DNA from: Chrysemys picta bellii
Taxonomy: Eukaryota
DNA: 64,000 nucleotides
Assembly: GCF_011386835.1 (NCBI RefSeq)
Contig: NC_088792.1
Span: forward strand, 226,052,001-226,116,000
Direction: 5' to 3'
Shown: positions 11,725 to 47,480 of the stretch, in pieces
Numbering within the stretch: the stretch's first letter is position 1
How the letters are laid out: each line of letters begins with the position of its first letter
Notes under the pieces: generated by a model
What the model saw: only the letters and a program-made list of their open reading frames with translations
What the model was told of the DNA's origin: nothing
Databases searched by the model: none
Made by a program: the position numbers and the translations under genes

Positions 11725-11740
11725 GTGAGTGAGTGAGTGA

Positions 11741-11776
<36 letters not shown>
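11725..11776. repeat. Compound (GTGA)n(GT)n microsatellite
   Basis: Directly visible. Confidence 0.98.
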
Positions 11777-23809: not shown

Positions 23810-25290
23810 ACTAGAATTCTTTGAGTATGTCAACAGCTGATAAAGGAGAATCTGTTAAATAATGTATTTGTACTTTGAATAAACCTTTGACAAAGTTCCT
23901 CACCAGAAAGTATAAGGAAACTCTGGCAAGAAGTCATGGGGTGAGAAGTAAAGCACGGTCAAAGAACAAAAGTTAAGAGTAGGAATAAATGGTCAATTTC
24001 CAGATAGCAAAAGGTTATCAAAGGAGCACCTCCAGGATCTGCACTATGATTAGTGTTGTTTAATATATTTATTAATAATCTGGAAAAAAGGAGTGAAGTA
24101 TGAGGTGGTCTACTTTGCAGATGACAACAATTATTTAGGTTAGTCAAGACTAGAGAAGACTGTAAAGAATTTCTAAGAGATCTATCAGTGCTTGATGTAC
24201 AGGCAATGTGGTAATAGATGAAATTCACTTTGACCTATGCAAGTTACAAGACATTAGAAGGGATCATTTGAATTACTGGTACATATTAATGGGTTCTAAA
24301 TTAACTACAACCACTCAGGAAAAGAAGCTGACCATCCGTATGGACAGTTTAATGTAAACACATGTTTACAGTTTCAGATTATATTCAGGCTAAAGTTTGA
24401 TGCCAAATACATGTGAGGCTTCCCTCACATGTATTTGTACAGTTTAATGTAAACACATGTATTTGCACAGTTTAATGTAAACACACGTTCACTGTGCAGT
24501 GTTGAGTTGTTTCTGCTTTCTGGCTACTGGTGGCAGTGTTGTGGTGAATAAATGTTAGGATGTATAAATCTGGGATAGAAAATACTGAAAATATTATAGT
24601 CATTCTGTACATCGATGGAATGGTCTCACCTGGACTACTGTGTTCAGTTCTAGTCACCCCATCTCAACTATGATATAGCAGAAATAGAAGGGCTTTAGGG
24701 AAGCACAATGAAAATAATCAGGGGCAATAAAACAGCTCTATATGAGGAGAAACTGAAAAGGCTGGGACTGTTTAGTTCAGACTGGAGATGAATAAGAGGA
24801 AGTATAACAATAATGGACGCTATACAGGAGTTAATTCAGGCAGTCCTATTCACTCGCTAGAATGAGAAACCCTTTAATGAAACTCAAATACAACCAGTTA
24901 AAAATTGATAATGGATTTTGTTTTTTCCAATAGTGTAAAACTAACCTATGGAACTCTTTTGTACAAGATATCATTGCAACTAAGAGTTTAGAATAAATAC
25001 ATAAATAAAAAGCAGATATTTTTGTATGGATAATGAGAGCACGCACAGTTGTATTAGGTAGGATAAAAACATTAAGCATATCAACTTTCAATGTTTCACG
25101 TCAAAAGCCAGCCACTAATTCTAGGGCATTAGGAAAATACTTTCCTGATGGGCAGGTAATTCCACAATAGTCCACTGTGAGGTTACTCTCAAGTTCCTCG
25201 GAAGCATCTATTACTAGTGATTGTCAGAGACAAGATAGTGGACTGGATACCACTGGTCTGATCTGGTATGGCAATCCTTATGTTTTTAGT
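23810..25290 (+). mobile_element. Old 5'-truncated CR1 LINE fragment (RT C-terminus and 3' end)
   Basis: Degenerate CR1 RT motifs (cctttgacaaagttcctcac; tttgcagatgacaac = FADD; cacctggactactgtgttcagttctagtcacccc) and 3' tail ggactggataccactggtctgatctggtatggcaatccttatg. Confidence 0.8.
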
Positions 25291-28200
25291 ACAGCTACAG
25301 ATCTACAATTCTTAATGATACATTTATTTTTAAACAGTTTTATTCTTTTAAATTAATTTAAAATTATTTTAAAAGAATAAAATTTGTAAATATAGTAAAT
25401 TAATTATGTAATTAAACTAAATTTAACATTCTGTACGACAAGTTGTCTATCTGTTCTTAAAAATATACTTAAACATATAAATGAATGTTAAACAAACATT
25501 ACAAAACAAAGTCCATTGAATAGACTTTGCAGAGTCTCAGGCAGTTTGTAGCCTTCAAATACAAAATGGCACCATAAGATGTATGTACTCCATCCCACAC
25601 ATGCTTCGTGATATTTAGAGGGGAAATGTAGCCATTTTCCTAAGATCAGCAGCACAGCCTTTCAACAGCTAATAAGTACCTGTCACCATGAATGAAACTC
25701 AGAAACCTCTCAGAAAATGCACATTAGGAATCAGGCCTGCAGCAGCGCTAGTCTCTAGGCAACCCACAACAGCAGTTGGCCTGCAGCTGGTTGCCTGATT
25801 GGCTACACCACCACATTGGCTGGAAGGGCCAGCAGACTGACTCTTAAGCCAGCAAGCTCCAGAGCTCACTGGCTGCTCAATGCTCACACCCACCACTGTG
25901 AGGAGTGGGCTGACAGCGTGCCTTGATTCTCTTGAGACCGTCAGCATTCTTGTGCACAACACCCCAGCCATATCAGTTTTAACTAGCATTGGAATCCAGG
26001 CAAGTCCCCTAGACCCGCACACACCTCTCCAATGCAGAGAAGTACCGACACTGGATGTTAGGCCTATGCTTATACTGAGGGGATCCCAGCCATCTTGTTT
26101 TGAGATGCCTGGCATAGACTCTGGCAGCGCTGAGGCTGGGAAACACTAGGCTCCCAGCCCCAAGGAGCTGGTCTGTGCTGTCTAGGTCTTCCCCTCCCCT
26201 GGTAGTCCTCAGAACCCACAAGCCATAGTCGGCAGAGCCAGACCATCAAGCCAGTTTTTGATGATGCTCCACATATGTCTACTGATTCAACTATTTGCAA
26301 GCCCCAACATTCACCAAGAGGCCCTCGTTGACTTTGGGCCTTGGGTAATTTTATGGACCTGAACTTTGCTGAGGTCCATGCAATTCCCACCATACACAAG
26401 AATTCTCCAGATCTGGTTGAATCTGCTGATGGGTCCCTTCTCTCCTTGGGAGACAAGACCTGCCAGTGATAGTTGTCACTCTCTGGGGTCATCAGGAAAC
26501 CCTCAGATTTGGGCTAATCTGGGCCCCCCATGCTCTGGAAATCGTAGGTATGCCCTGGCTTACTATCCAATACCTCCACATTTGCTGGTGGAAGGAGACA
26601 CTACACTTTAGTTCTTGATATTGCCGGCTGTCCTGCCTCCCAGGATCCAAGAACTGGACTGGTACGCTCTACACGTGATAATGCAAACCTCAGAGAGCAA
26701 GGCACCAGGACCTCAGGGCCACTCACATCTCTGTCTGCCTCAGCTGAGATCCTCCACAAATACCGTGACTCTGTTAATGTTTTTGACAAGGGAAAGGCAG
26801 ACATTCTGCCCCCGCATCAGAATTATGACTCCCTCAATGACCTCCAACCTGTAGCAGAGATCCCAATAAGTCAGATATATGCCAGAACTTCAGACTCTCC
26901 CCATGTATTTTCAGGAGAACCTACAGAAGGGTTTCATCTGCCCATCCACATCTCCGGCAAGTGCCCAATATTTTTTGCCAAGAAGATGGATGACTCATTG
27001 TGGCCTTGTATCGATTATGGGGCCTCAACAAAGTGACCATACGAAACTGCTCACTGCTCCCCCTCATAAGCAAACTCAGACTGGCTACATGCAGCTCACA
27101 TTTTCACTAAGTTAGACCTGCAGAGGCCTATAACCTGGTGTTTGTGGGAGATGAATGGAAGACTGGCTTTCATACTCAATATGGTCATTATGAATATCTG
27201 GTCATGCCGCTCAGCCCATGCAATGCTCCAGCAACTTTTCAACACTTTATGAATGATATATTTTGGGATATACTGGACCAATCTGTCATTATTTACCTTG
27301 ACACCCTAATTTCTTCTGAGGGCAAAGTTCTTCAGGACCAGCACCTGGGCGGCATTCTTGAAAGACTATGCCAGAATCACCTATGTATCAAGCTGGAGAA
27401 ATGTGTATCTGACTGGGACATCCTTAAATTTCTCGGGGATATTATCTCATTTAACAGACTGGCAATGGAACCCCACAAAGTGGCAGCCAGCATGGAATGG
27501 GCGTGACTAAAGGATGCACACAGAATCCAATACTTCTTGGCTTTTGTTAACTTCTACGACTGATTAAGAGAGCTTTAAACTAGGAATTGGGGGAAGATGG
27601 TTGGGAGATGTCCAGGTAATCTCCACGCTGGATTTTAACATTGAAAGGGAAGAAAATGAAGTAAGAAAGGATACAGCTGTGGGTAGGAGAATGGACATAC
27701 GGAGGAAGGGTAGTGTAGATACCATTCTAATAGGTGATACTGGTGGTAGAATGTCTGGGCCTAATTGGGTAAAGAATGTGAGCGAAGCCAAACAGCAAGA
27801 ATTAAGATGTTTGTACACCAATGCAAGGAGCCTAGGTAACAAAATGGAGGAACTAGAGTTACTGGTGCAGGACGTGAAACCGGATTTTATGGGGATAACA
27901 GAAACATGGTGGAATAGTAGTCATGACTGGAGTACAGGTATTGAAGGGTATGTGCTGTTTAGGAAAGACAGAAATAAAGGCAAAGCTGGTGGAGTAGCAT
28001 TGTATATCAATGATGAGGTAGAAAAAAGCAGTGGTGGAATGGATAAGACTGTAAAGAAATAAGAAGGGATGGAATGGATAAGACAGAGTCTGTCTGAGCA
28101 AAAATCACATTGGGGAAGAAAGCTACTATAGCCTCCCCTGAGATAGTGTTTGGGGTGTGCTATAGACCACCAGGATCTGATTTGAATATGGATAGAGACC

Positions 28201-30176
28201 TTTTTAATGTTTTTAATGAAGTAAATACTAATGGGAATTGTGTGATCATGGGAGATTAACTTCCTAGATATAGACTGGAGGATAAGTGCTAGTAATAGTA
28301 ATAGGGCTCAGATTTTCCTAGTATGCGATAGCTGATGGATTCCTTCACCAAGTAATTGCTGAACCAACAAGAGGGGATGCCATTTTAGATTTGATTTTGG
28401 TGAGTAGTGAGGACCTCATAGAAGAAATGGTTGTGGGGGACAACCTTGGTTCGAGCGATCATGAGCTAATTCAGTTTAAACTAAATGGAAGGATAAACAA
28501 AAATAGATCTGTGACTGGGTTTTTGATTTCAAAAGGGCTAATTTTAAAAAAATTAAGGAAATTAGTTAGGGAAGTGGATTGGACTGAAGAACTTGTGATC
28601 TAAAGGCAGAGGAGGCCTGGAATTACTTCAAGTCAAAGTTGCAGAAACTATCAGAAGTCTGCATCCCAAGAAAGGGGAAAAAATTCATAGGCAGGAGTTG
28701 TAGACCAAGCTGAATGAGCAAGCATCTCAGAGAGGTGATTAAGAAAAAGCAGAAAGCCTACAACGAGTGGAAGATGGGAGTGATCAGCAAGGAAAGCTAC
28801 CTTATTGAGGTCAGAACATGTAGGGATAAAGTGAGAAAAGCCAAAAGCCATGTAGAGTTGGACCTTGCAAAGGAAATTAAAACCAATAGTAAAAGGCTCT
28901 ATAGCCATATAAATAGGAAGAAAACCAAGAAAGAAGAAGTGGAATCGCTAAACACGGAGGATGGAGTGGAGGTTAAGGATAATCTAGGCATGGCCCAATA
29001 TCTAAACAAATATTTTGCCTCAGTCTTTAATGAGGGTCTTAGGGATAATGGTAGGATGACAAATGGGAATGAGGAAATGGAGGTAGATATTACCACATCC
29101 GAGGTAGAAGCCAAAGTCGAACAGCTTAATGGGACTAAATCGGGGGCCCCAGATAACCTTCATCCAAGAATATTAAAGGAACTGGCACATGAAATTGCAA
29201 GCCCATTAGCAAGAATTTTTAATGAATCTGTAAACTCAGGGGTTGTACCGTATGTCTGGAGAATTGCTAACAGTTCCTATTTTTAAGAAAGGGAAAAAAA
29301 GTGATCCGAGCAACTACAGGCCTGTTAGTTTGACATCTGTAGTATGCAAGGTCTTGGAAAAATTTTTGAAAGAGAAAGTAGTTAAGGACATTGAGGTCAA
29401 TGGTAATTGGGACAAAATCCAACATGGTTTTACAACAGGTAGATCATGCCAAACCAACCTGATCTCCTTCTTTGAGAAGACAACAGACTTTTTAGACAAA
29501 GGAAACGCAGTGGATCTAATTTACCTCGATTTCAGTAAAGCATTTTATACGATTCCACATGGGGAATTATTAGCTAAATTGGAAAAGATGGGGATCAATA
29601 TGAAAATTGAAAGGTGGATAAGGAACTGGTTAAAGGGGAGACTACAACAGGTTGTACTGAAAGGTGAACTGTCAGGCTGGAGGGAGGTTACTAGTGGAGT
29701 TCCTCAGAGATCGGTTTTGGGACCAATCTTATTTAATCTTTTTATTGCGGACCTTGGCACAAAAAAGTGGGAATGTGCTAATAAAGTTTGCGGATGACAC
29801 GAAGCTGGGAGGTATTGCCACTATAGAGAAGGACCAGGATATCATACAGGAAGATCTGGATGACCTTGTAAACTGGAAAGTAATAGGATGAAATTTAATA
29901 GTGAAAAGTGCAAGGTCATGCATTTAGGGATTAATATCAAGAATTGTGGTTATAAGCTGGGGACGCATCAGTTGGAAGTAACAGAGGAAGAGAAGGACTT
30001 CGGAGTATTGGTTGATCACAGGATGACTATTAGCTGCCAATGTGATATGGCCGTGAAAAAAGCTAATGCGGTCTTGGGATGCATCAGGCGAGGTATTTCC
30101 AGTAGAGATAAGGAGGTGTTAGTACCGTTATACAAGGCACTGGTGAGACCTCATCTGGAATACTGTGTGCAGTTCT

Positions 30177-33166
30177 CAGAGGCGTAGCGAGCGCCCTCGG
30201 TACCCTCCAACCGGAGGGGGCCCCGCAAGGAAGGGGGCCCCTAAAAGTGGCAAAAAAAATGTAAGGTATAACTAGGTAAGTGACATTTATTGACGCTATT
30301 GCACAATCCATGTCGGTTTTACTGACAAAACCGTGAAGTCATTATGATACATCATAATGCTATTGGCTACATCAGTTGTCTGTCGGTCAGTTTCGAATTT
30401 TAGTTGGACCCATTCAAAGAATGTGTATTTGCGTTCATAATGGCGGTCGGCGGATAAATGTTATTAATTTAGTTGTTTAATTTTTTATCGTTTGAAACGA
30501 TTAGTTTCCAACGCAGAAGCATGCTTTGTGATGTCTAAGAGAACGTATAAGAGCGGAGCTGGTAAACGAAAGGCAGCAAAAGATGCCAAGAAGGAACTTG
30601 AGAAAATTCCAAAGTTGTCAACGTATTTTGCGCTGCAATCCAATGTACAGGTACAGGCACATGAAACGGACAGCGCTAGCAGCGACGAATCGTATCCAGA
30701 AGTATCCAGAAGTGCTTCAAGTGAGGTCGAAGGTGAATCCAGTTGTTCTACCAAACAAACTGTGACAGATATTCCAGCTGCTGCCGGGAAAGAAGTATCT
30801 GAATCTGAACCACTGACTGATGATCCAGGAGATTGGCCGTCTATAATATCGGACAGGCAAGTGTGTGACATTGTTGCACGTGGCCCACCGCAGCAGAATG
30901 AAAGTTACGAATTTCCATTTAACGAGGAAAGACGGAGGTTCACAAGTACTCATTTCTATCGAACCATGGCAAATGGCGAGAAAATAAGACGTTCATGGTT
31001 AATGTACTCAGTTCAGAAAGATGCCATTTTTTGTTTTTGTTGTAAATTATTTGGCACTGGCGACATACCGCTACGTCGTGGAACATCTGCTTGGAAAGCA
31101 CTGTCAAAAAGACTTCAGCAGCATGAAACAGGCAAAGGTCATCAAGCCTGTATGGTGAAATGGTTTGACCTTCGGTCAGGCATAGTAAACCGTACATCTA
31201 TTGACCAACTCGAATTGCAGGCTTTTCTGAAAGAAAGATTTCTGGAGAAATGTTGTCAAATGCATGGTTGATGTCGTTATTATCTTGTCCAAAAGAAACT
31301 TGCATTTCGAGGAAGTAATGAAAAGCTCGGCGATCCTTCGAATGGCAACTTTTTGGGACTCTTTGAATTGCTTGCAAAGTATGATACTGTCCTCAGCGAA
31401 CTTTTACAGAGGATTAAGAAGGCAGAGACACATGTTCAGTACCTCAGTCCACAGATCCAAAATGAGCTGATTCAACTTGTTGCCAGTAACATTCAAGAGG
31501 CCAACATAGCGCAGCTTAAAAAAGCAAAATATTATTCAGTTATTTTGGACTGTACTCCTGACGTGTCACATGAAGAACAGATGTCTGTGGTGTTACGTTT
31601 TGTTGAATGCAACGGTGAAGATGGTGTCAATATTCGTGAAGCATTTGTTGGTTTTCTTAATGTTCATGATACAACTGGCGAGGGCTTATTGGAAGCATTT
31701 CTTGAAAAGGCAAACAATTTAGGAATACACATTGCTGACATGAGAGGCCAAGCTTATGATAACGGCGCAAATATGAGAGGAAAGAATAAAGGAGTTCAAG
31801 CCCGCATGCTAGAAATAAATGACCGTGCCTTGTATGTACCATGTGGAGCTCACTCTTGGAATCTTGTGATCTCAGACGCGGCAAAGTCATCGAAATATGC
31901 CGTTGACTTTTTCGGTCTGATTAACAGAATATACGTTATCTTTTCTTCTTCACCTTCACGTTGGGATATACTTCAAGAACATATGCCAATATCTGTTAAA
32001 GGCTTATCGGACACTCGTTGGGATTCGAGAATTGATGCTGTGAAGCCATTGTGTTATCACCTTGAAGAATTGTGCAATGCTTTGTTATCTTTGCGAGAAT
32101 ATGCGCTCGAAAAGAAAGATGGCAATACAGCAACAGAAGCCGATGCGCTTTTAGACCATGTTACTACCTGGCCTTTTGTTCTGACTGTGTACACGTGGTA
32201 CGATATACTATTTCACGTCAATAAAACCACCAAATTAATTCAGTCACCAGATGTGTCAATTGACGTACTGCAGGCAGAAGTCAGTGCTACAAAGAAGTTT
32301 TTGGAAGACTATCGAAATACAGGATATATCTCTGTGGCCACAAATGCACGTGAAATAGCAGAGCATATGGGTATTGAGCAGGTGTTTCCAGAAACCAGGG
32401 TGCGACGTAAGAAGAGAATGTTTGATTACGAATGTGCTGATGATTCGAGTCGTCTTTCTGCCGAAGAAAAATTCAAATCGCAGTTCTTTCTTGTTCTCAC
32501 TGATCAGGCCATATCTTCTGTTTCGTCGTGATTTGACCAACTCGTGGAGTGGTATAAGTTGTTTGGATTTCTGTATAACGCTAACAGCCTGAAGCAGTGT
32601 CACAGAGAAAATGAACTGGAGAATCACAGCAAAAATTTTGAAAGAAAAATGGGAGACATTGATGCCAACGAACTCATAATGGAATTGATGCGTTTTATTT
32701 ATGTCATCGAGAAAGAGAGAGGACTTGTCACGGCAAACAATTTTTTAACGTACATATACAAGGCCTTTAGGAGATATATCCGAATCTTTCCATTTGCATC
32801 AGAATTCTTCTGACCACACCAGTTACTGTCGCTGGTGCTGAAAGGAGCTTCAGCAGAATGAAACTGATCAAGAATATCCTGCGCTTAACCATGACAGGCT
32901 TTCTGCACTTGCAGTTATCTCAATCGAAAACAAGATTGCCAGATCTCTGGACTATGACACATTGATTAACCAATTTACGGAGAACAAGGCTCGAAAGAAG
33001 CGCTTTGCGTAAATACGGAATACATGTACACTGTAGGCCTATGTATACATAATATGAACCCTGTATATTGTATAAAATAAATACCGCATTCCAGTTTCTG
33101 CATTGTAAGGGGCCCCACCCGGAAATATGTTCGGAGGGGGCCACGTTCTTTGTTGCTAGGGCCCTG
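30177..33166 (+). mobile_element. Full-length hAT DNA transposon (Tip100/ZMYM-like transposase type), 2990 bp
   Basis: Exact 8-bp TSD GCAGTTCT at 30169-30176 and 33167-33174; removing the insert restores the CR1 ORF2 sequence. Imperfect TIRs CAGAGGCGTAGCGA / CAGGGCCCTAGCAA (10/14). Contains a transposase gene. Confidence 0.96.
30531..33012 (+). pseudogene. hAT transposase pseudogene (~830 codons reconstructed)
   Basis: ATG 30531. TTF-type Zn finger (WLMYS...FCFCCKLF...LQQHE...H). Catalytic-domain motifs YYSVILDCTPD, QAYDNGANM, CGAHSWNL, LSDTRW. C-terminal dimerisation domain TPVTVAGAERSFSRMKLIK...RLSALAVISIE. TAA at 33010-33012, AATAAA at 33076-33081. Lesions: compensating frameshifts near 31238 and 31302, TGA at 32529-32531 (likely from CGA), frameshifts near 32765 and 32896. 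Confidence 0.93.
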
Positions 33167-44515: not shown

Positions 44516-45635
44516 CTTAGAACAAAAGCCCAGAGGAACAAAGAGAAAGAGAAGAAAATGGGCCATGTAGAAAGAAAGGAAAAGCAGGGGAGTGAGAAAT
44601 GAAAAGAAGCAAATAAAATAAAGAATACCTTTAAGTATAAGCAACCAAATACCAGGAGTATGAGAGCATAGCCCACTTTTGCCATTCTTATTTTACTGTA
44701 TATATTGGTGCTTGGTTGCTACACAGGTTGGGGCACTTTATAAATTAGAGAGATAATTTAGATAATAGAACTCCAGTCCCTTTATCTTTCCCCACCAATC
44801 TTGCTGCTCTCCTCTCCTGCTCTTGAGCAAAGTGAGGATTCCCTTTCACATTCAAAGCTCCCCTGTTCAATGCCACAACTCCTCATGCCTGCCTCCTAAA
44901 GCCAACCATCAGCACGCCTTGTCTTCTCACACCGAACTACTCTGAGAATCATGATGGTTCCTACCTGCCCCAGACCTGACCTCACAGTGTAGTACGCTCA
45001 CCTCCTCCCTGCTGGTCCTTATTCAGAGAGTCACACCATGAACGTGTGGTGGCTGGAGACAGGCAATGTCAACCAAGCAGGCAGGCAAAGGAGGGGATCA
45101 CATCAGAGGAAAGGTCGTACTGGAATTTGTTCCACCCTAGAGTCCTCACCGAGCTCCAGCTCCCCATGGCCAGAAACTCAGCTAAGAACAGACATTCTGA
45201 TCAATACAATGGTCCCACAGATACTAGCCGTCACTCAGGTGACATCCACCAGGCAATTTGATAGCTTCGTTAGGGTTAGGATTTTCTTCTTCAGTTTGAA
45301 TTAGTATAGACTATGGCTCCTCGGATCTGTAACTGGTTTTTTTAAACTATCACTTGTAGATCTTAGTAGGCAACCAGCAACTCAAATCTGTAAGTGAGAG
45401 TTTTTATTCTCATTCTGAGTTGTTTCTGCTTTCTGGCCACTGGTGGCTTTTCTGAGTGACTGAAAATAAAGCAAGGGTAAGTTTTTCATATGGCAGCATT
45501 CATATGTGCTTCCTTAGAAGTGTAAGTAGAAAATTTAAAATTAGTTACACTTTTTTTAATTTTGCCCTTTCAAGCCTTGTTTCTGCAGATAGTATGTTGG
45601 AAAAGCTGCCATACACAATCGCATGTGCACGCACG

Positions 45636-45638
<3 letters not shown>

Positions 45639-45669
<31 letters not shown>
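45639..45669. repeat. (AC)n microsatellite
   Basis: Directly visible. Confidence 0.98.
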
Positions 45670-46556: not shown

Positions 46557-47480
46557 TCAGAGTTTGGGTTCTGTTTGGATTAGCACTGTAAAATCCGGAA
46601 GAGCAAAACTTTTATGTGAACATTTCAGAACGTCAAAAAAGTTATAGGTTGATGCAGGTTTTGGATGAAGGTTGTTAACACATGAGGTTTCTTATTTTAT
46701 TCATTCCAAATCACATATATTATACAAATGAATTGCACCACATGTGGCAGGCTCAAAAGTCTTTAGACACATCATTGATACTTGAGTACAAGATGGGTCA
46801 GCTACTGAATGTCATATACTGTTAGCCAATGTCGTTCTGAAGGAGAACATTTTAAATTCTGAAGATACATTTTATTATCATTTATGGGGGATTGTCATGG
46901 ATCCATTAAGGCCATTTATGAATCTAACCTGAATAAATATGCTGAAGAACATGTGACTTTAATTTGATACCAGTGTCTTTGTTCCCCAATTGAGAGGCAT
47001 AGGGAGGCTTTAAAAATGCAGTTCTAATAACCTTATACCAACTATTCAATCCCAATCACTTTAGAAACAAACAAGAGCCTTCTCAAAATCAAAAATCTCT
47101 CAAACTAATGTGATCTCAAAATCTCCACCAGTTTGGGCTTCAATCTTGTGAGAACATCTCTAGGTCTTGGCACTGCTGAAAGGGAAGCCTCACATGTATT
47201 TGGCGTCAAACTTTAGCCTGAATGTAATCTGAATGTTACCATCTCCGTCCATCTCTCGCTATTTAAAGTCTGTGAGAGATTGTTAGCTGGTGTAAATCAG
47301 CACAGCTCCCTTGGCTTCAAGGCAGCTATGCCAATGTACACCAGCTGAGAATCTGTTTCTATTTTGTTACTGGATGTTTTAGTAAATGTAGAACTTTCCA
47401 ATGCCAACGCTGGGTGGGAAATGAGGAGAATAGGATTCTTACTAGCTGCATATTAAAAACTCTAGTGAAATGGAAACTAA

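What the first reader, a model, noticed from the sequence alone, without database searches (positions are those of the whole stretch)
24496..24541. Second captured fragment, 32 bp from 21 kb away, ~80 bp from the first
Seen: 24503-24534 (TGAGTTGTTTCTGCTTTCTGGCTACTGGTGGC) matches 45416-45447 at 31/32 in direct orientation. It is flanked by a 9-bp direct repeat GCAGTGTTG (24496-24504 and 24533-24541) whose ends overlap the insert by microhomology. This donor is 1.7 kb from the donor of the 53-bp piece but was copied in the opposite orientation. Inference: two independent template visits to the same distal neighbourhood make coincidence unlikely and favour a spatially close DNA donor. Opposite orientations argue against a single RNA template.
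Basis: partly seen in the sequence, partly recalled or inferred. Interest (0 to 1): 0.7.

Follow-up and report, generated by a model that had tools for sequence, protein, structure and literature searches.

The report
Second copied patch in repair scar
A 32-base piece inside a dead CR1 retroelement was copied from 21 kb away, most likely in the same old DNA repair or replication accident as a nearby 53-base piece; this is a clean example of a known mutation type with no evident function.

Summary
24503-24534 equals 45416-45447 at 31/32 in direct orientation. The 9-mer GCAGTGTTG flanks it on both sides and shares 2 bases with the donor match at each junction. In the whole 64-kb window, only this match and the 53-mer (24373-24425, reverse complement of 47181-47233) are short, high-identity, non-self matches.

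New here: contigs of four related, name-coded organisms were laid on 24000-24900. B, C and D carry both pieces. E, the most divergent, has the orthologous empty site: one copy of each flanking repeat and neither piece. So the inserts are derived, they are not CR1 consensus, and they co-occur in every organism sampled. Depth over the 32-mer equals the recipient plus one further contig, so it is not a common repeat.

The same branch also lost 13 bases 8 bp to the right. The 28-bp tandem unit differs in copy number among carriers.

Best reading: one microhomology-guided template-switching event (MMBIR/FoSTeS-like or Pol theta-like) that copied DNA in cis. This is a known kind of mutation with no evident function.

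The scan reported this scar before on this same window (s1-329900), not on other DNA. Its "turtle TOX intron" context was not tested here.

The parts
23760..25290 (+). Host element: an old, 5'-truncated CR1 LINE copy with many stops and frameshifts. The boundaries are approximate.
   Evidence: The translation shows CR1 ORF2 motifs (FADD...; HLDYCVQF). tblastn links it to a second CR1 fragment at 29999-30175. Hundreds of paralog pieces pile on its conserved parts.
24496..24504 (+). Left copy of the 9-bp target duplication GCAGTGTTG. Its last two bases (TG) are shared with the donor match.
   Evidence: Organism E has only one copy.
24503..24534 (+). The 32-base match to donor 2. Of these, 28 bases (24505-24532) are donor-only and 2 bases at each end are microhomology.
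   Evidence: Present without change in B, C and D and absent in E.
24533..24541 (+). Right copy of the 9-bp target duplication. Its first two bases (GC) are shared with the donor match.
45416..45447 (+). Donor 2. It is still in place, and its surroundings have no other copy in the window.
24373..24425 (+). First insert: the reverse complement of donor 1, 51/53.
   Evidence: At 24382, B, C and D have the donor's C, so the T is a later change in this genome's lineage.
47181..47233 (-). Donor 1, 1,734 bp from donor 2.
24404..24437 (+). Snap-back hairpin with 15-bp arms and a 4-nt loop. The second arm (24423-24437) equals 47188-47202 in direct orientation.
24344..24366 (+). Left copy of the 23-bp target duplication that flanks the first insert. 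The right copy is at 24467-24489 (22/23).
   Evidence: E has one copy.
24426..24485 (+). 28-bp tandem unit, 2.1 copies here. C also has two copies; B and D have one.
   Evidence: table 4: '24439 left out 28' in X5 and X9, not in X7.
24549..24550 (+). Site of a 13-bp deletion relative to organism E, 8 bp right of the second 9-mer. E keeps AAAGCAAAAAAAA here, which aligns with CR1 codons of the paralog.
   Evidence: table 4.

Best explanation
The 32-base piece is one leg of a single complex, microhomology-guided template-switching event. The event happened in an ancestor of organisms A-D, after the split from E.

Proposed course, all inferred: a nascent DNA strand was copying this dead CR1 element and repeatedly left its template.
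1. It copied 53 bases from 47.2 kb on one strand.
2. It snapped back on itself.
3. It returned 23 bases behind where it had left.
4. It copied 38 native bases.
5. It jumped to 45.4 kb on the other strand, primed by a 2-base match (TG), and copied 28 more bases.
6. It returned 9 bases behind its departure point through another 2-base match (GC), which duplicated GCAGTGTTG.
7. It possibly then skipped 13 bases forward in an A-rich run.

Shown:
- The inserts are copies of sequence that still sits 21-23 kb away.
- They are derived.
- They co-occur in all sampled carriers.
- They are flanked by target duplications and short microhomologies.

Inferred:
- That this was one event.
- That the template was DNA.
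- That the donor region lay close in space.

The enzyme cannot be told from sequence. It could be break-induced or fork-restart synthesis, or polymerase theta. No function is evident.
For: - Match and statistics. These are the only two short high-identity matches in 64 kb, and both link the same roughly 170-bp recipient to one 1.8-kb donor neighbourhood.
- Empty site: an organism E contig (381 nt, about 98% alike in the flanks, depth like its neighbours) joins 24366 to 24533 with only CACTGT between them (tables 5c and 8). That equals the window with both inserts removed, apart from one base.
- Carriers: B, C and D carry both inserts with no change in 24496-24541.
- Outgroup position: E is about twice as divergent as B-D. 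I count about 13 differences in 783 aligned bases for E, against about 0.8-1% for the others, table 8. It therefore behaves as the outgroup.
- CR1 collinearity: the in-window paralog is collinear with the empty allele.
- Junctions: 2-nt microhomology at each end and a 9-bp duplication.
- Companion features: snap-back hairpin and 23-bp duplication at the first insert; a 13-bp deletion on the same branch, 8 bp away.
Against: - Co-occurrence in four sampled lineages shows one branch, not one event.
- Two-base microhomologies are weak. By my estimate, both junctions reaching 2 nt or more by chance has p about 0.02.
- Most described small templated insertions copy from within about 100 bp, and the tool of PMC8421209 looks no further than that. 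These donors are 21-23 kb away.
- No donor contig of organism E was laid on the stretch (depth 0 in 24372-24526). I therefore could not show that the donors predate the insertion in E. The tool warns that a hole proves nothing.
- Organism names are coded, so the tree is inferred only from divergence.
Confidence: 0.7

Rival explanations
1. Two separate templated-insertion events on the same branch. A break-prone spot in the CR1 copy was repaired twice, each time copying from the same donor neighbourhood, because the two regions were held together in a stable chromatin loop.
For: The two inserts are separated by 38 native bases, and each has its own flanking duplication. The species sampling resolves only one branch. 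The 28-bp unit shows that this spot kept changing afterwards.
Against: No sampled organism has only one insert. If the donors were picked independently, a second donor within 1.8 kb of the first has a chance of about 6% even when restricted to this window, and about 1e-6 genome-wide (my estimate). Three lesions lie within about 185 bp on one short branch.
Confidence: 0.12
2. RNA-templated patch. Intron RNA of the host gene, or antisense RNA, was reverse-transcribed by a LINE enzyme or by polymerase theta and used to fill a break, as in human templated sequence insertion polymorphisms.
For: A flanking duplication of at least 5 bp is one feature of class 1 TSIPs, and microhomology is a feature of class 2 (PMC5110952). 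Recipient and both donors lie within 23 kb of each other.
Against: There is no poly(A) tract, no AATAAA signal and no TTTT/A-like target at 24496, and class 2 events have no target duplication. On a single nascent strand the two pieces need templates of opposite sense. The snap-back arm and the 5-7-nt abortive copies look like DNA-polymerase switching. Expression was not tested.
Confidence: 0.08
3. Excision footprint of a DNA transposon that made a 9-bp target duplication, with the gap filled by copied 'filler' DNA.
For: The pattern 9-mer, filler, 9-mer is what such a footprint looks like.
Against: No terminal-repeat remnant lies between the 9-mers; all 28 inner bases come from the donor. This does not explain the 23-bp duplication or the first insert, which used the same donor neighbourhood. 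E shows a clean single 9-mer.
Confidence: 0.04
4. Not an insertion at all. Either the inserts are ancestral and organism E lost them, or the match is chance or a shared repeat.
For: Deletions between direct repeats do occur, and both inserts are flanked by direct repeats.
Against: E would need two precise deletions that restore a sequence collinear with CR1. None of 100 shuffles gave such a match. Depth over the inserts is one to two contigs, not repeat-like.
Confidence: 0.03

Closest known systems
Microhomology-mediated template-switch insertions (MMBIR/FoSTeS; 'MMB-TI' of PMC8421209)
   Same: The inserts are copied and the donors are kept. There is microhomology at the switches, several templates are used in both orientations, and the strand returns to the original template. 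Such events are known to accumulate as harmless germline variants during evolution, with up to five templates in one event.
   Different: The catalogued small events have inverted templates within 100 bp, which is the limit of the detection tool. Here the templates are 21 and 23 kb away, one of them is direct, and each return is displaced backwards, which leaves 23-bp and 9-bp target duplications.
Polymerase theta end joining / synthesis-dependent MMEJ templated insertions (PMC4912351, PMC2943611, PMC5068794)
   Same: Short microhomologies, repeated abortive copying, a snap-back hairpin in the companion insert, and a small deletion next to the insertion.
   Different: Typical inserts are shorter and are copied from the immediate flanks of the break. 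A two-ended break does not easily give the order 'repeat, insert, native stretch, repeat, insert, repeat' seen here (inference).
Templated sequence insertion polymorphisms (TSIPs) of humans (PMC5110952)
   Same: [quoted passage not shown] It shares the flanking duplication with class 1 and the microhomology with class 2.
   Different: It lacks the class 1 poly(A) tract, polyadenylation signal and TTTT/A target. It has a duplication, which class 2 lacks. TSIPs are thought to come from RNA and from anywhere in the genome. Here two donors in cis and in opposite orientations point to DNA.
Short-range template switch mutations (PMC5453318, PMC7954356)
   Same: A replication-linked switch to another template and back, visible as a mutation cluster in species comparisons.
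   Different: Those events are local, within tens to hundreds of bases, and inverted. This one is long-range.

Membership tests
MMBIR/FoSTeS-type templated insertion | The inserted sequence matches a template elsewhere, and that template is retained (copy, not cut) | tested here: met
   31/32 match to 45416-45447, which is still in place.
MMBIR/FoSTeS-type templated insertion | The insertion is derived: an empty site exists in a relative | tested here: met
   An organism E contig joins 24366 to 24533 with CACTGT between. This equals the window minus both inserts.
MMBIR/FoSTeS-type templated insertion | Microhomology at the switch points | tested here: met
   TG on the left and GC on the right. 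This is short; both reaching 2 nt or more by chance has p about 0.02 by my estimate.
MMBIR/FoSTeS-type templated insertion | Several switches within one event | tested here: inconclusive
   Both inserts are present in B, C and D and absent in E, and the donors are 1.7 kb apart. One branch is shown; one event is inferred.
MMBIR/FoSTeS-type templated insertion | Replicative origin (fork collapse or break-induced replication; dependence on those enzymes) | not testable with these tools
   Sequence alone cannot show it.
Polymerase theta end joining templated insertion | Template in the immediate flanks of the break (tens of bases) | tested here: not met
   No local template exists within 24300-24620. 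The only match is 20.9 kb away.
Polymerase theta end joining templated insertion | Dependence on polymerase theta | not testable with these tools
   This would need genetics.
TSIP class 1 (LINE ORF2-mediated) | Target-site duplication of at least 5 bp | tested here: met
   9-bp GCAGTGTTG on both sides, single in E. Definition taken from PMC5110952.
TSIP class 1 (LINE ORF2-mediated) | Poly(A) tract, upstream AATAAA signal, and TTTT/A-like target | tested here: not met
   None of the three is present at 24496-24541.
TSIP class 2 (RNA-derived patch at a break) | No target duplication; end-joining features | tested here: not met
   A 9-bp duplication is present. Only the microhomology fits.
TSIP class 2 (RNA-derived patch at a break) | Donor is transcribed; RNA intermediate | not tested

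The most novel reading that the evidence does not exclude
The scar is a fossil record of a germline chromatin contact. The recipient at 24.4-24.5 kb and a 1.8-kb donor patch at 45.4-47.2 kb were held together, for example at the base of a loop, so that a wandering strand end found the same neighbourhood twice. If so, long-range templated insertions with backward-displaced returns would form a class that current detectors (templates within 100 bp) miss. Slowly evolving genomes such as this one could then be mined for them as a map of ancestral 3D contacts.
Probability: 0.1. Interest if true: 0.5.

Novelty: new member of a known kind. Interest (0 to 1): 0.3.

Why it matters
This is a well-resolved natural example of a multi-template insertion. 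The pre-insertion allele is preserved in a living relative, so donor, recipient, duplications and microhomologies can all be read base by base. It shows that small templated insertions in the germline can draw on templates more than 20 kb away, twice from the same neighbourhood. It has no evident effect on any gene. Its value is as a teaching case and as a seed pattern for systematic mining, not as a new mechanism.

Tried and rejected
- Chance match: rejected. None of 100 shuffles gave a match, and these are the only two such matches in the window.
- CR1 consensus or common repeat: rejected. See the empty site in E, the single-copy depth over the inserts, and the collinear in-window paralog.
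- Greedy exact-match parsing of 24340-24550 against the rest of the window: chance 9-10-mers swamped it and it added nothing beyond the BLAST segments.
- Excess of copying errors as a mark of error-prone synthesis: dropped. In B, C and D no difference is reported at 24401 or 24525, although a second contig is laid there, and 24382 carries the donor's letter. The original copy was therefore probably exact. This rests on the absence of rows in a table and is an inference.
- 28-bp tandem copy as part of the original event: not settled. A and C have two units, B and D have one, and the letters at 24477 and 24466 fit neither a simple later gain nor a simple later loss without extra steps.
- Gene context: an ORF list and a composition profile showed no recognisable host-gene exon.
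- A findings search by words returned nothing relevant.
The N runs (15560-15838, 21843-21974, 21994-22134) were left as they are.

Full report
**1. The observation**

- 24503-24534 matches 45416-45447 on the same strand at 31 of 32 bases. The one difference is at 24525, T here and C in the donor.
- With up to three mismatches the pattern occurs only at these two places. None of 100 dinucleotide-preserving shuffles produced any match.
- GCAGTGTTG occurs exactly twice in the 64 kb, at 24496-24504 and 24533-24541.
- The donor match overlaps the left 9-mer by TG and the right 9-mer by GC.
- The companion 53-mer, 24373-24425, is the reverse complement of 47181-47233 at 51/53. A further 15 bases (24423-24437) repeat 47188-47202 in direct orientation. 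This forms a hairpin with 15-bp arms and a 4-nt loop.
- Donor 2 ends 1,734 bp before donor 1 begins.
- A self-comparison of the whole window finds 16 non-self pairs. Only these two are short (80 bp or less) and at least 94% identical.
- The donor neighbourhood (44.5-48 kb) has no other copy in the window except a CA microsatellite.

**2. The host**

The recipient lies in an old, 5'-truncated CR1 LINE copy at roughly 23760-25290. Its translation is full of stops and frameshifts but shows the usual ORF2 motifs.

**3. Evidence from other organisms**

One search found DNA runs of six name-coded organisms that hold 23000-26000. The shares of sampled words were A 0.90, F 0.89, B 0.64, C 0.62, D 0.49 and E 0.48. 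I laid contigs of B, C, D and E on 24000-24900 at 88% likeness.

*The empty site in E.* A 381-nt contig of E aligns to 24131-24366 and to 24533-24665, with only CACTGT between the two parts. Its depth (10.7) is like that of its neighbours (11.7 and 11), and its flanks are about 98% alike. CACTGT is window 24490-24495. E's allele is therefore the window with both inserts and both duplications removed, apart from one base, T instead of C at 24486. The 31-mers that cross this junction cannot exist in a genome carrying the inserts, so this is not an assembly shortcut (inference).

*The carriers.* B, C and D carry both inserts. No difference from this genome is reported anywhere in 24496-24541.

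*The position of E.* From the listed pieces I count about 13 differences in 783 aligned bases for E, against about 0.8-1% for B, C and D. E is thus the most distant and behaves as the outgroup. Because names are coded, the tree rests on this alone.

**4.

*Part of the CR1 consensus?* No.
- The orthologous copy in E lacks the 32-mer.
- A second CR1 fragment in the window (29999-30175) is collinear with the empty allele and has no counterpart of the 32-mer. tblastn gives E = 0.017, with the clear motif ...LGCI...PLY...RPHLEYCVQF, and DNA identity is 60%.

*Common in the genome?* Not in B, C or D.
- The bin 24496-24526 has the depth of the recipient contig plus about one more contig. For X5 that is 72.2 against 40.7, which fits a second contig of depth about 41 covering 24 of the 31 positions.
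- Bins over conserved CR1 parts reach depths in the thousands.
- This genome's own assembly could not be searched outside the window.

**5. Further detail from the same table**

- *Later substitutions.* At 24382, B, C and D have the donor's C, so the T is a later change in this genome's lineage. No row appears at 24401 or 24525, although a second, donor-derived contig is laid there. Records X5-11 and X9-26 cover 24369-24425. This suggests that the donors of B-D carry the recipient's letters, that this genome's donors changed later, and that the original copy was exact. It rests on the absence of table rows, so I rate it as an inference.
- *The 28-bp tandem unit.* The unit at 24426-24485 is present twice in this genome and in C, and once in B and D. 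It varies in copy number, and I could not decide whether it belongs to the original event.
- *A 13-bp deletion.* E has 13 extra bases (AAAGCAAAAAAAA) behind 24549. They align with the 'VKKA' codons of the CR1 paralog. The A-D lineage therefore lost 13 bp, just 8 bp to the right of the second 9-mer, on the same branch as the two insertions.
- *A gap in E.* No contig of E was laid on 24372-24526 at all, not even a donor contig. The tool warns that a hole proves nothing, and E's donors may simply differ enough to escape seeding. This is a gap in the evidence.

**6. Mechanism**

Call the 23-bp box a, the next six bases b, and the 9-mer c.
- The empty allele reads a-b-c.
- The derived allele reads a-[6 nt + 53 nt reverse copy of donor 1 + 12-nt snap-back + 1 nt]-a-b-c-[28 nt direct copy of donor 2]-c. 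A 13-bp gap follows 8 bp further on.

The simplest path is one nascent strand that repeatedly left and rejoined its template. Each time it landed a little behind where it had left (by 23 and by 9 bases), and it finally skipped 13 bases ahead in an A-rich run. Microhomology at the two switches of the second insert is 2 nt each.

On one nascent strand, the two donor pieces need templates of opposite sense. If two broken ends primed separately, that argument weakens. I could not build a simple two-ended break model that gives this order of pieces (inference).

The pattern fits microhomology-mediated template switching during fork restart or break-induced replication. The snap-back and the abortive short copies also fit polymerase theta. 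Sequence alone cannot name the enzyme.

**7. Comparison with what is known**

[quoted passage not shown] That catalogue is limited to inverted templates within 100 bp.
- *Human templated sequence insertion polymorphisms (PMC5110952).* Class 1 has a target duplication plus a poly(A) tract, a polyadenylation signal and a TTTT/A target. Class 2 has no duplication and shows end-joining features, and these insertions are thought to come from RNA. The present insert has a duplication but none of the other class 1 marks, and it has microhomology but not the class 2 lack of duplication. It is a member of neither class.
- *Polymerase theta and SD-MMEJ work (PMC4912351, PMC2943611, PMC5068794) and short-range template switching (PMC5453318, PMC7954356).* These describe the same kinds of steps at shorter range.

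**8. Relation to earlier work of this scan**

A note on this same window (s1-329900) already called 24344-24485 a fossil multi-template repair scar and mentioned the 32-base piece. My results agree with it and add four things:
- the empty site in E;
- the co-occurrence of both inserts across organisms;
- the variable 28-bp unit;
- the neighbouring 13-bp deletion.

Its statement that the locus is a turtle TOX intron was not tested here. An ORF list and a composition profile showed no recognisable exon.

**9. Verdict**

This is a new, well-documented instance of a known mutation type, with no evident function. Interest is modest.

Noticed in passing
window 24426-24485: The 28-bp tandem unit differs in copy number between related organisms: two copies here and in C, one in B and D. 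The letters at 24466 and 24477 differ among them in a way that neither a simple later gain nor a simple later loss explains without extra steps.
   Followed up: partly
window 24549-24550: Organism E has 13 extra bases (AAAGCAAAAAAAA) that align with CR1 coding sequence. The lineage of this genome plus B, C and D therefore deleted them, 8 bp from the second insert, on the same branch as the insertions.
   Followed up: partly
window 25325-25394: AT-rich quasi-palindrome (71 bp, 84.5% self-complementary) just past the 3' end of the CR1 copy, about 800 bp from the scar. It could be a fork-stalling or break-prone site, but this is speculation.
   Followed up: no
window 29999-30175: A second CR1 ORF2 fragment (…LGCIRRG…PLYKALVRPHLEYCVQF) ends right where the hAT element noted by the scan (30177-33166) begins. 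The hAT probably inserted into a CR1 copy.
   Followed up: no
window 23330-23740: G-rich, low-complexity repeat block (GGGGCAGGGG-like units with periods of 9-21) directly upstream of the truncated CR1 5' end.
   Followed up: no
window 45628-45669 and 11729-11776: CA/TG microsatellites. This is the only other in-window match of the donor neighbourhood.
   Followed up: no
window 24202 and 24856: Organism E also differs by an 8-bp gap at 24202 and a 9-bp insertion (CTTATAATA) behind 24856. Their polarity is unknown, and the number of indels relative to substitutions looks high for this stretch.
   Followed up: no
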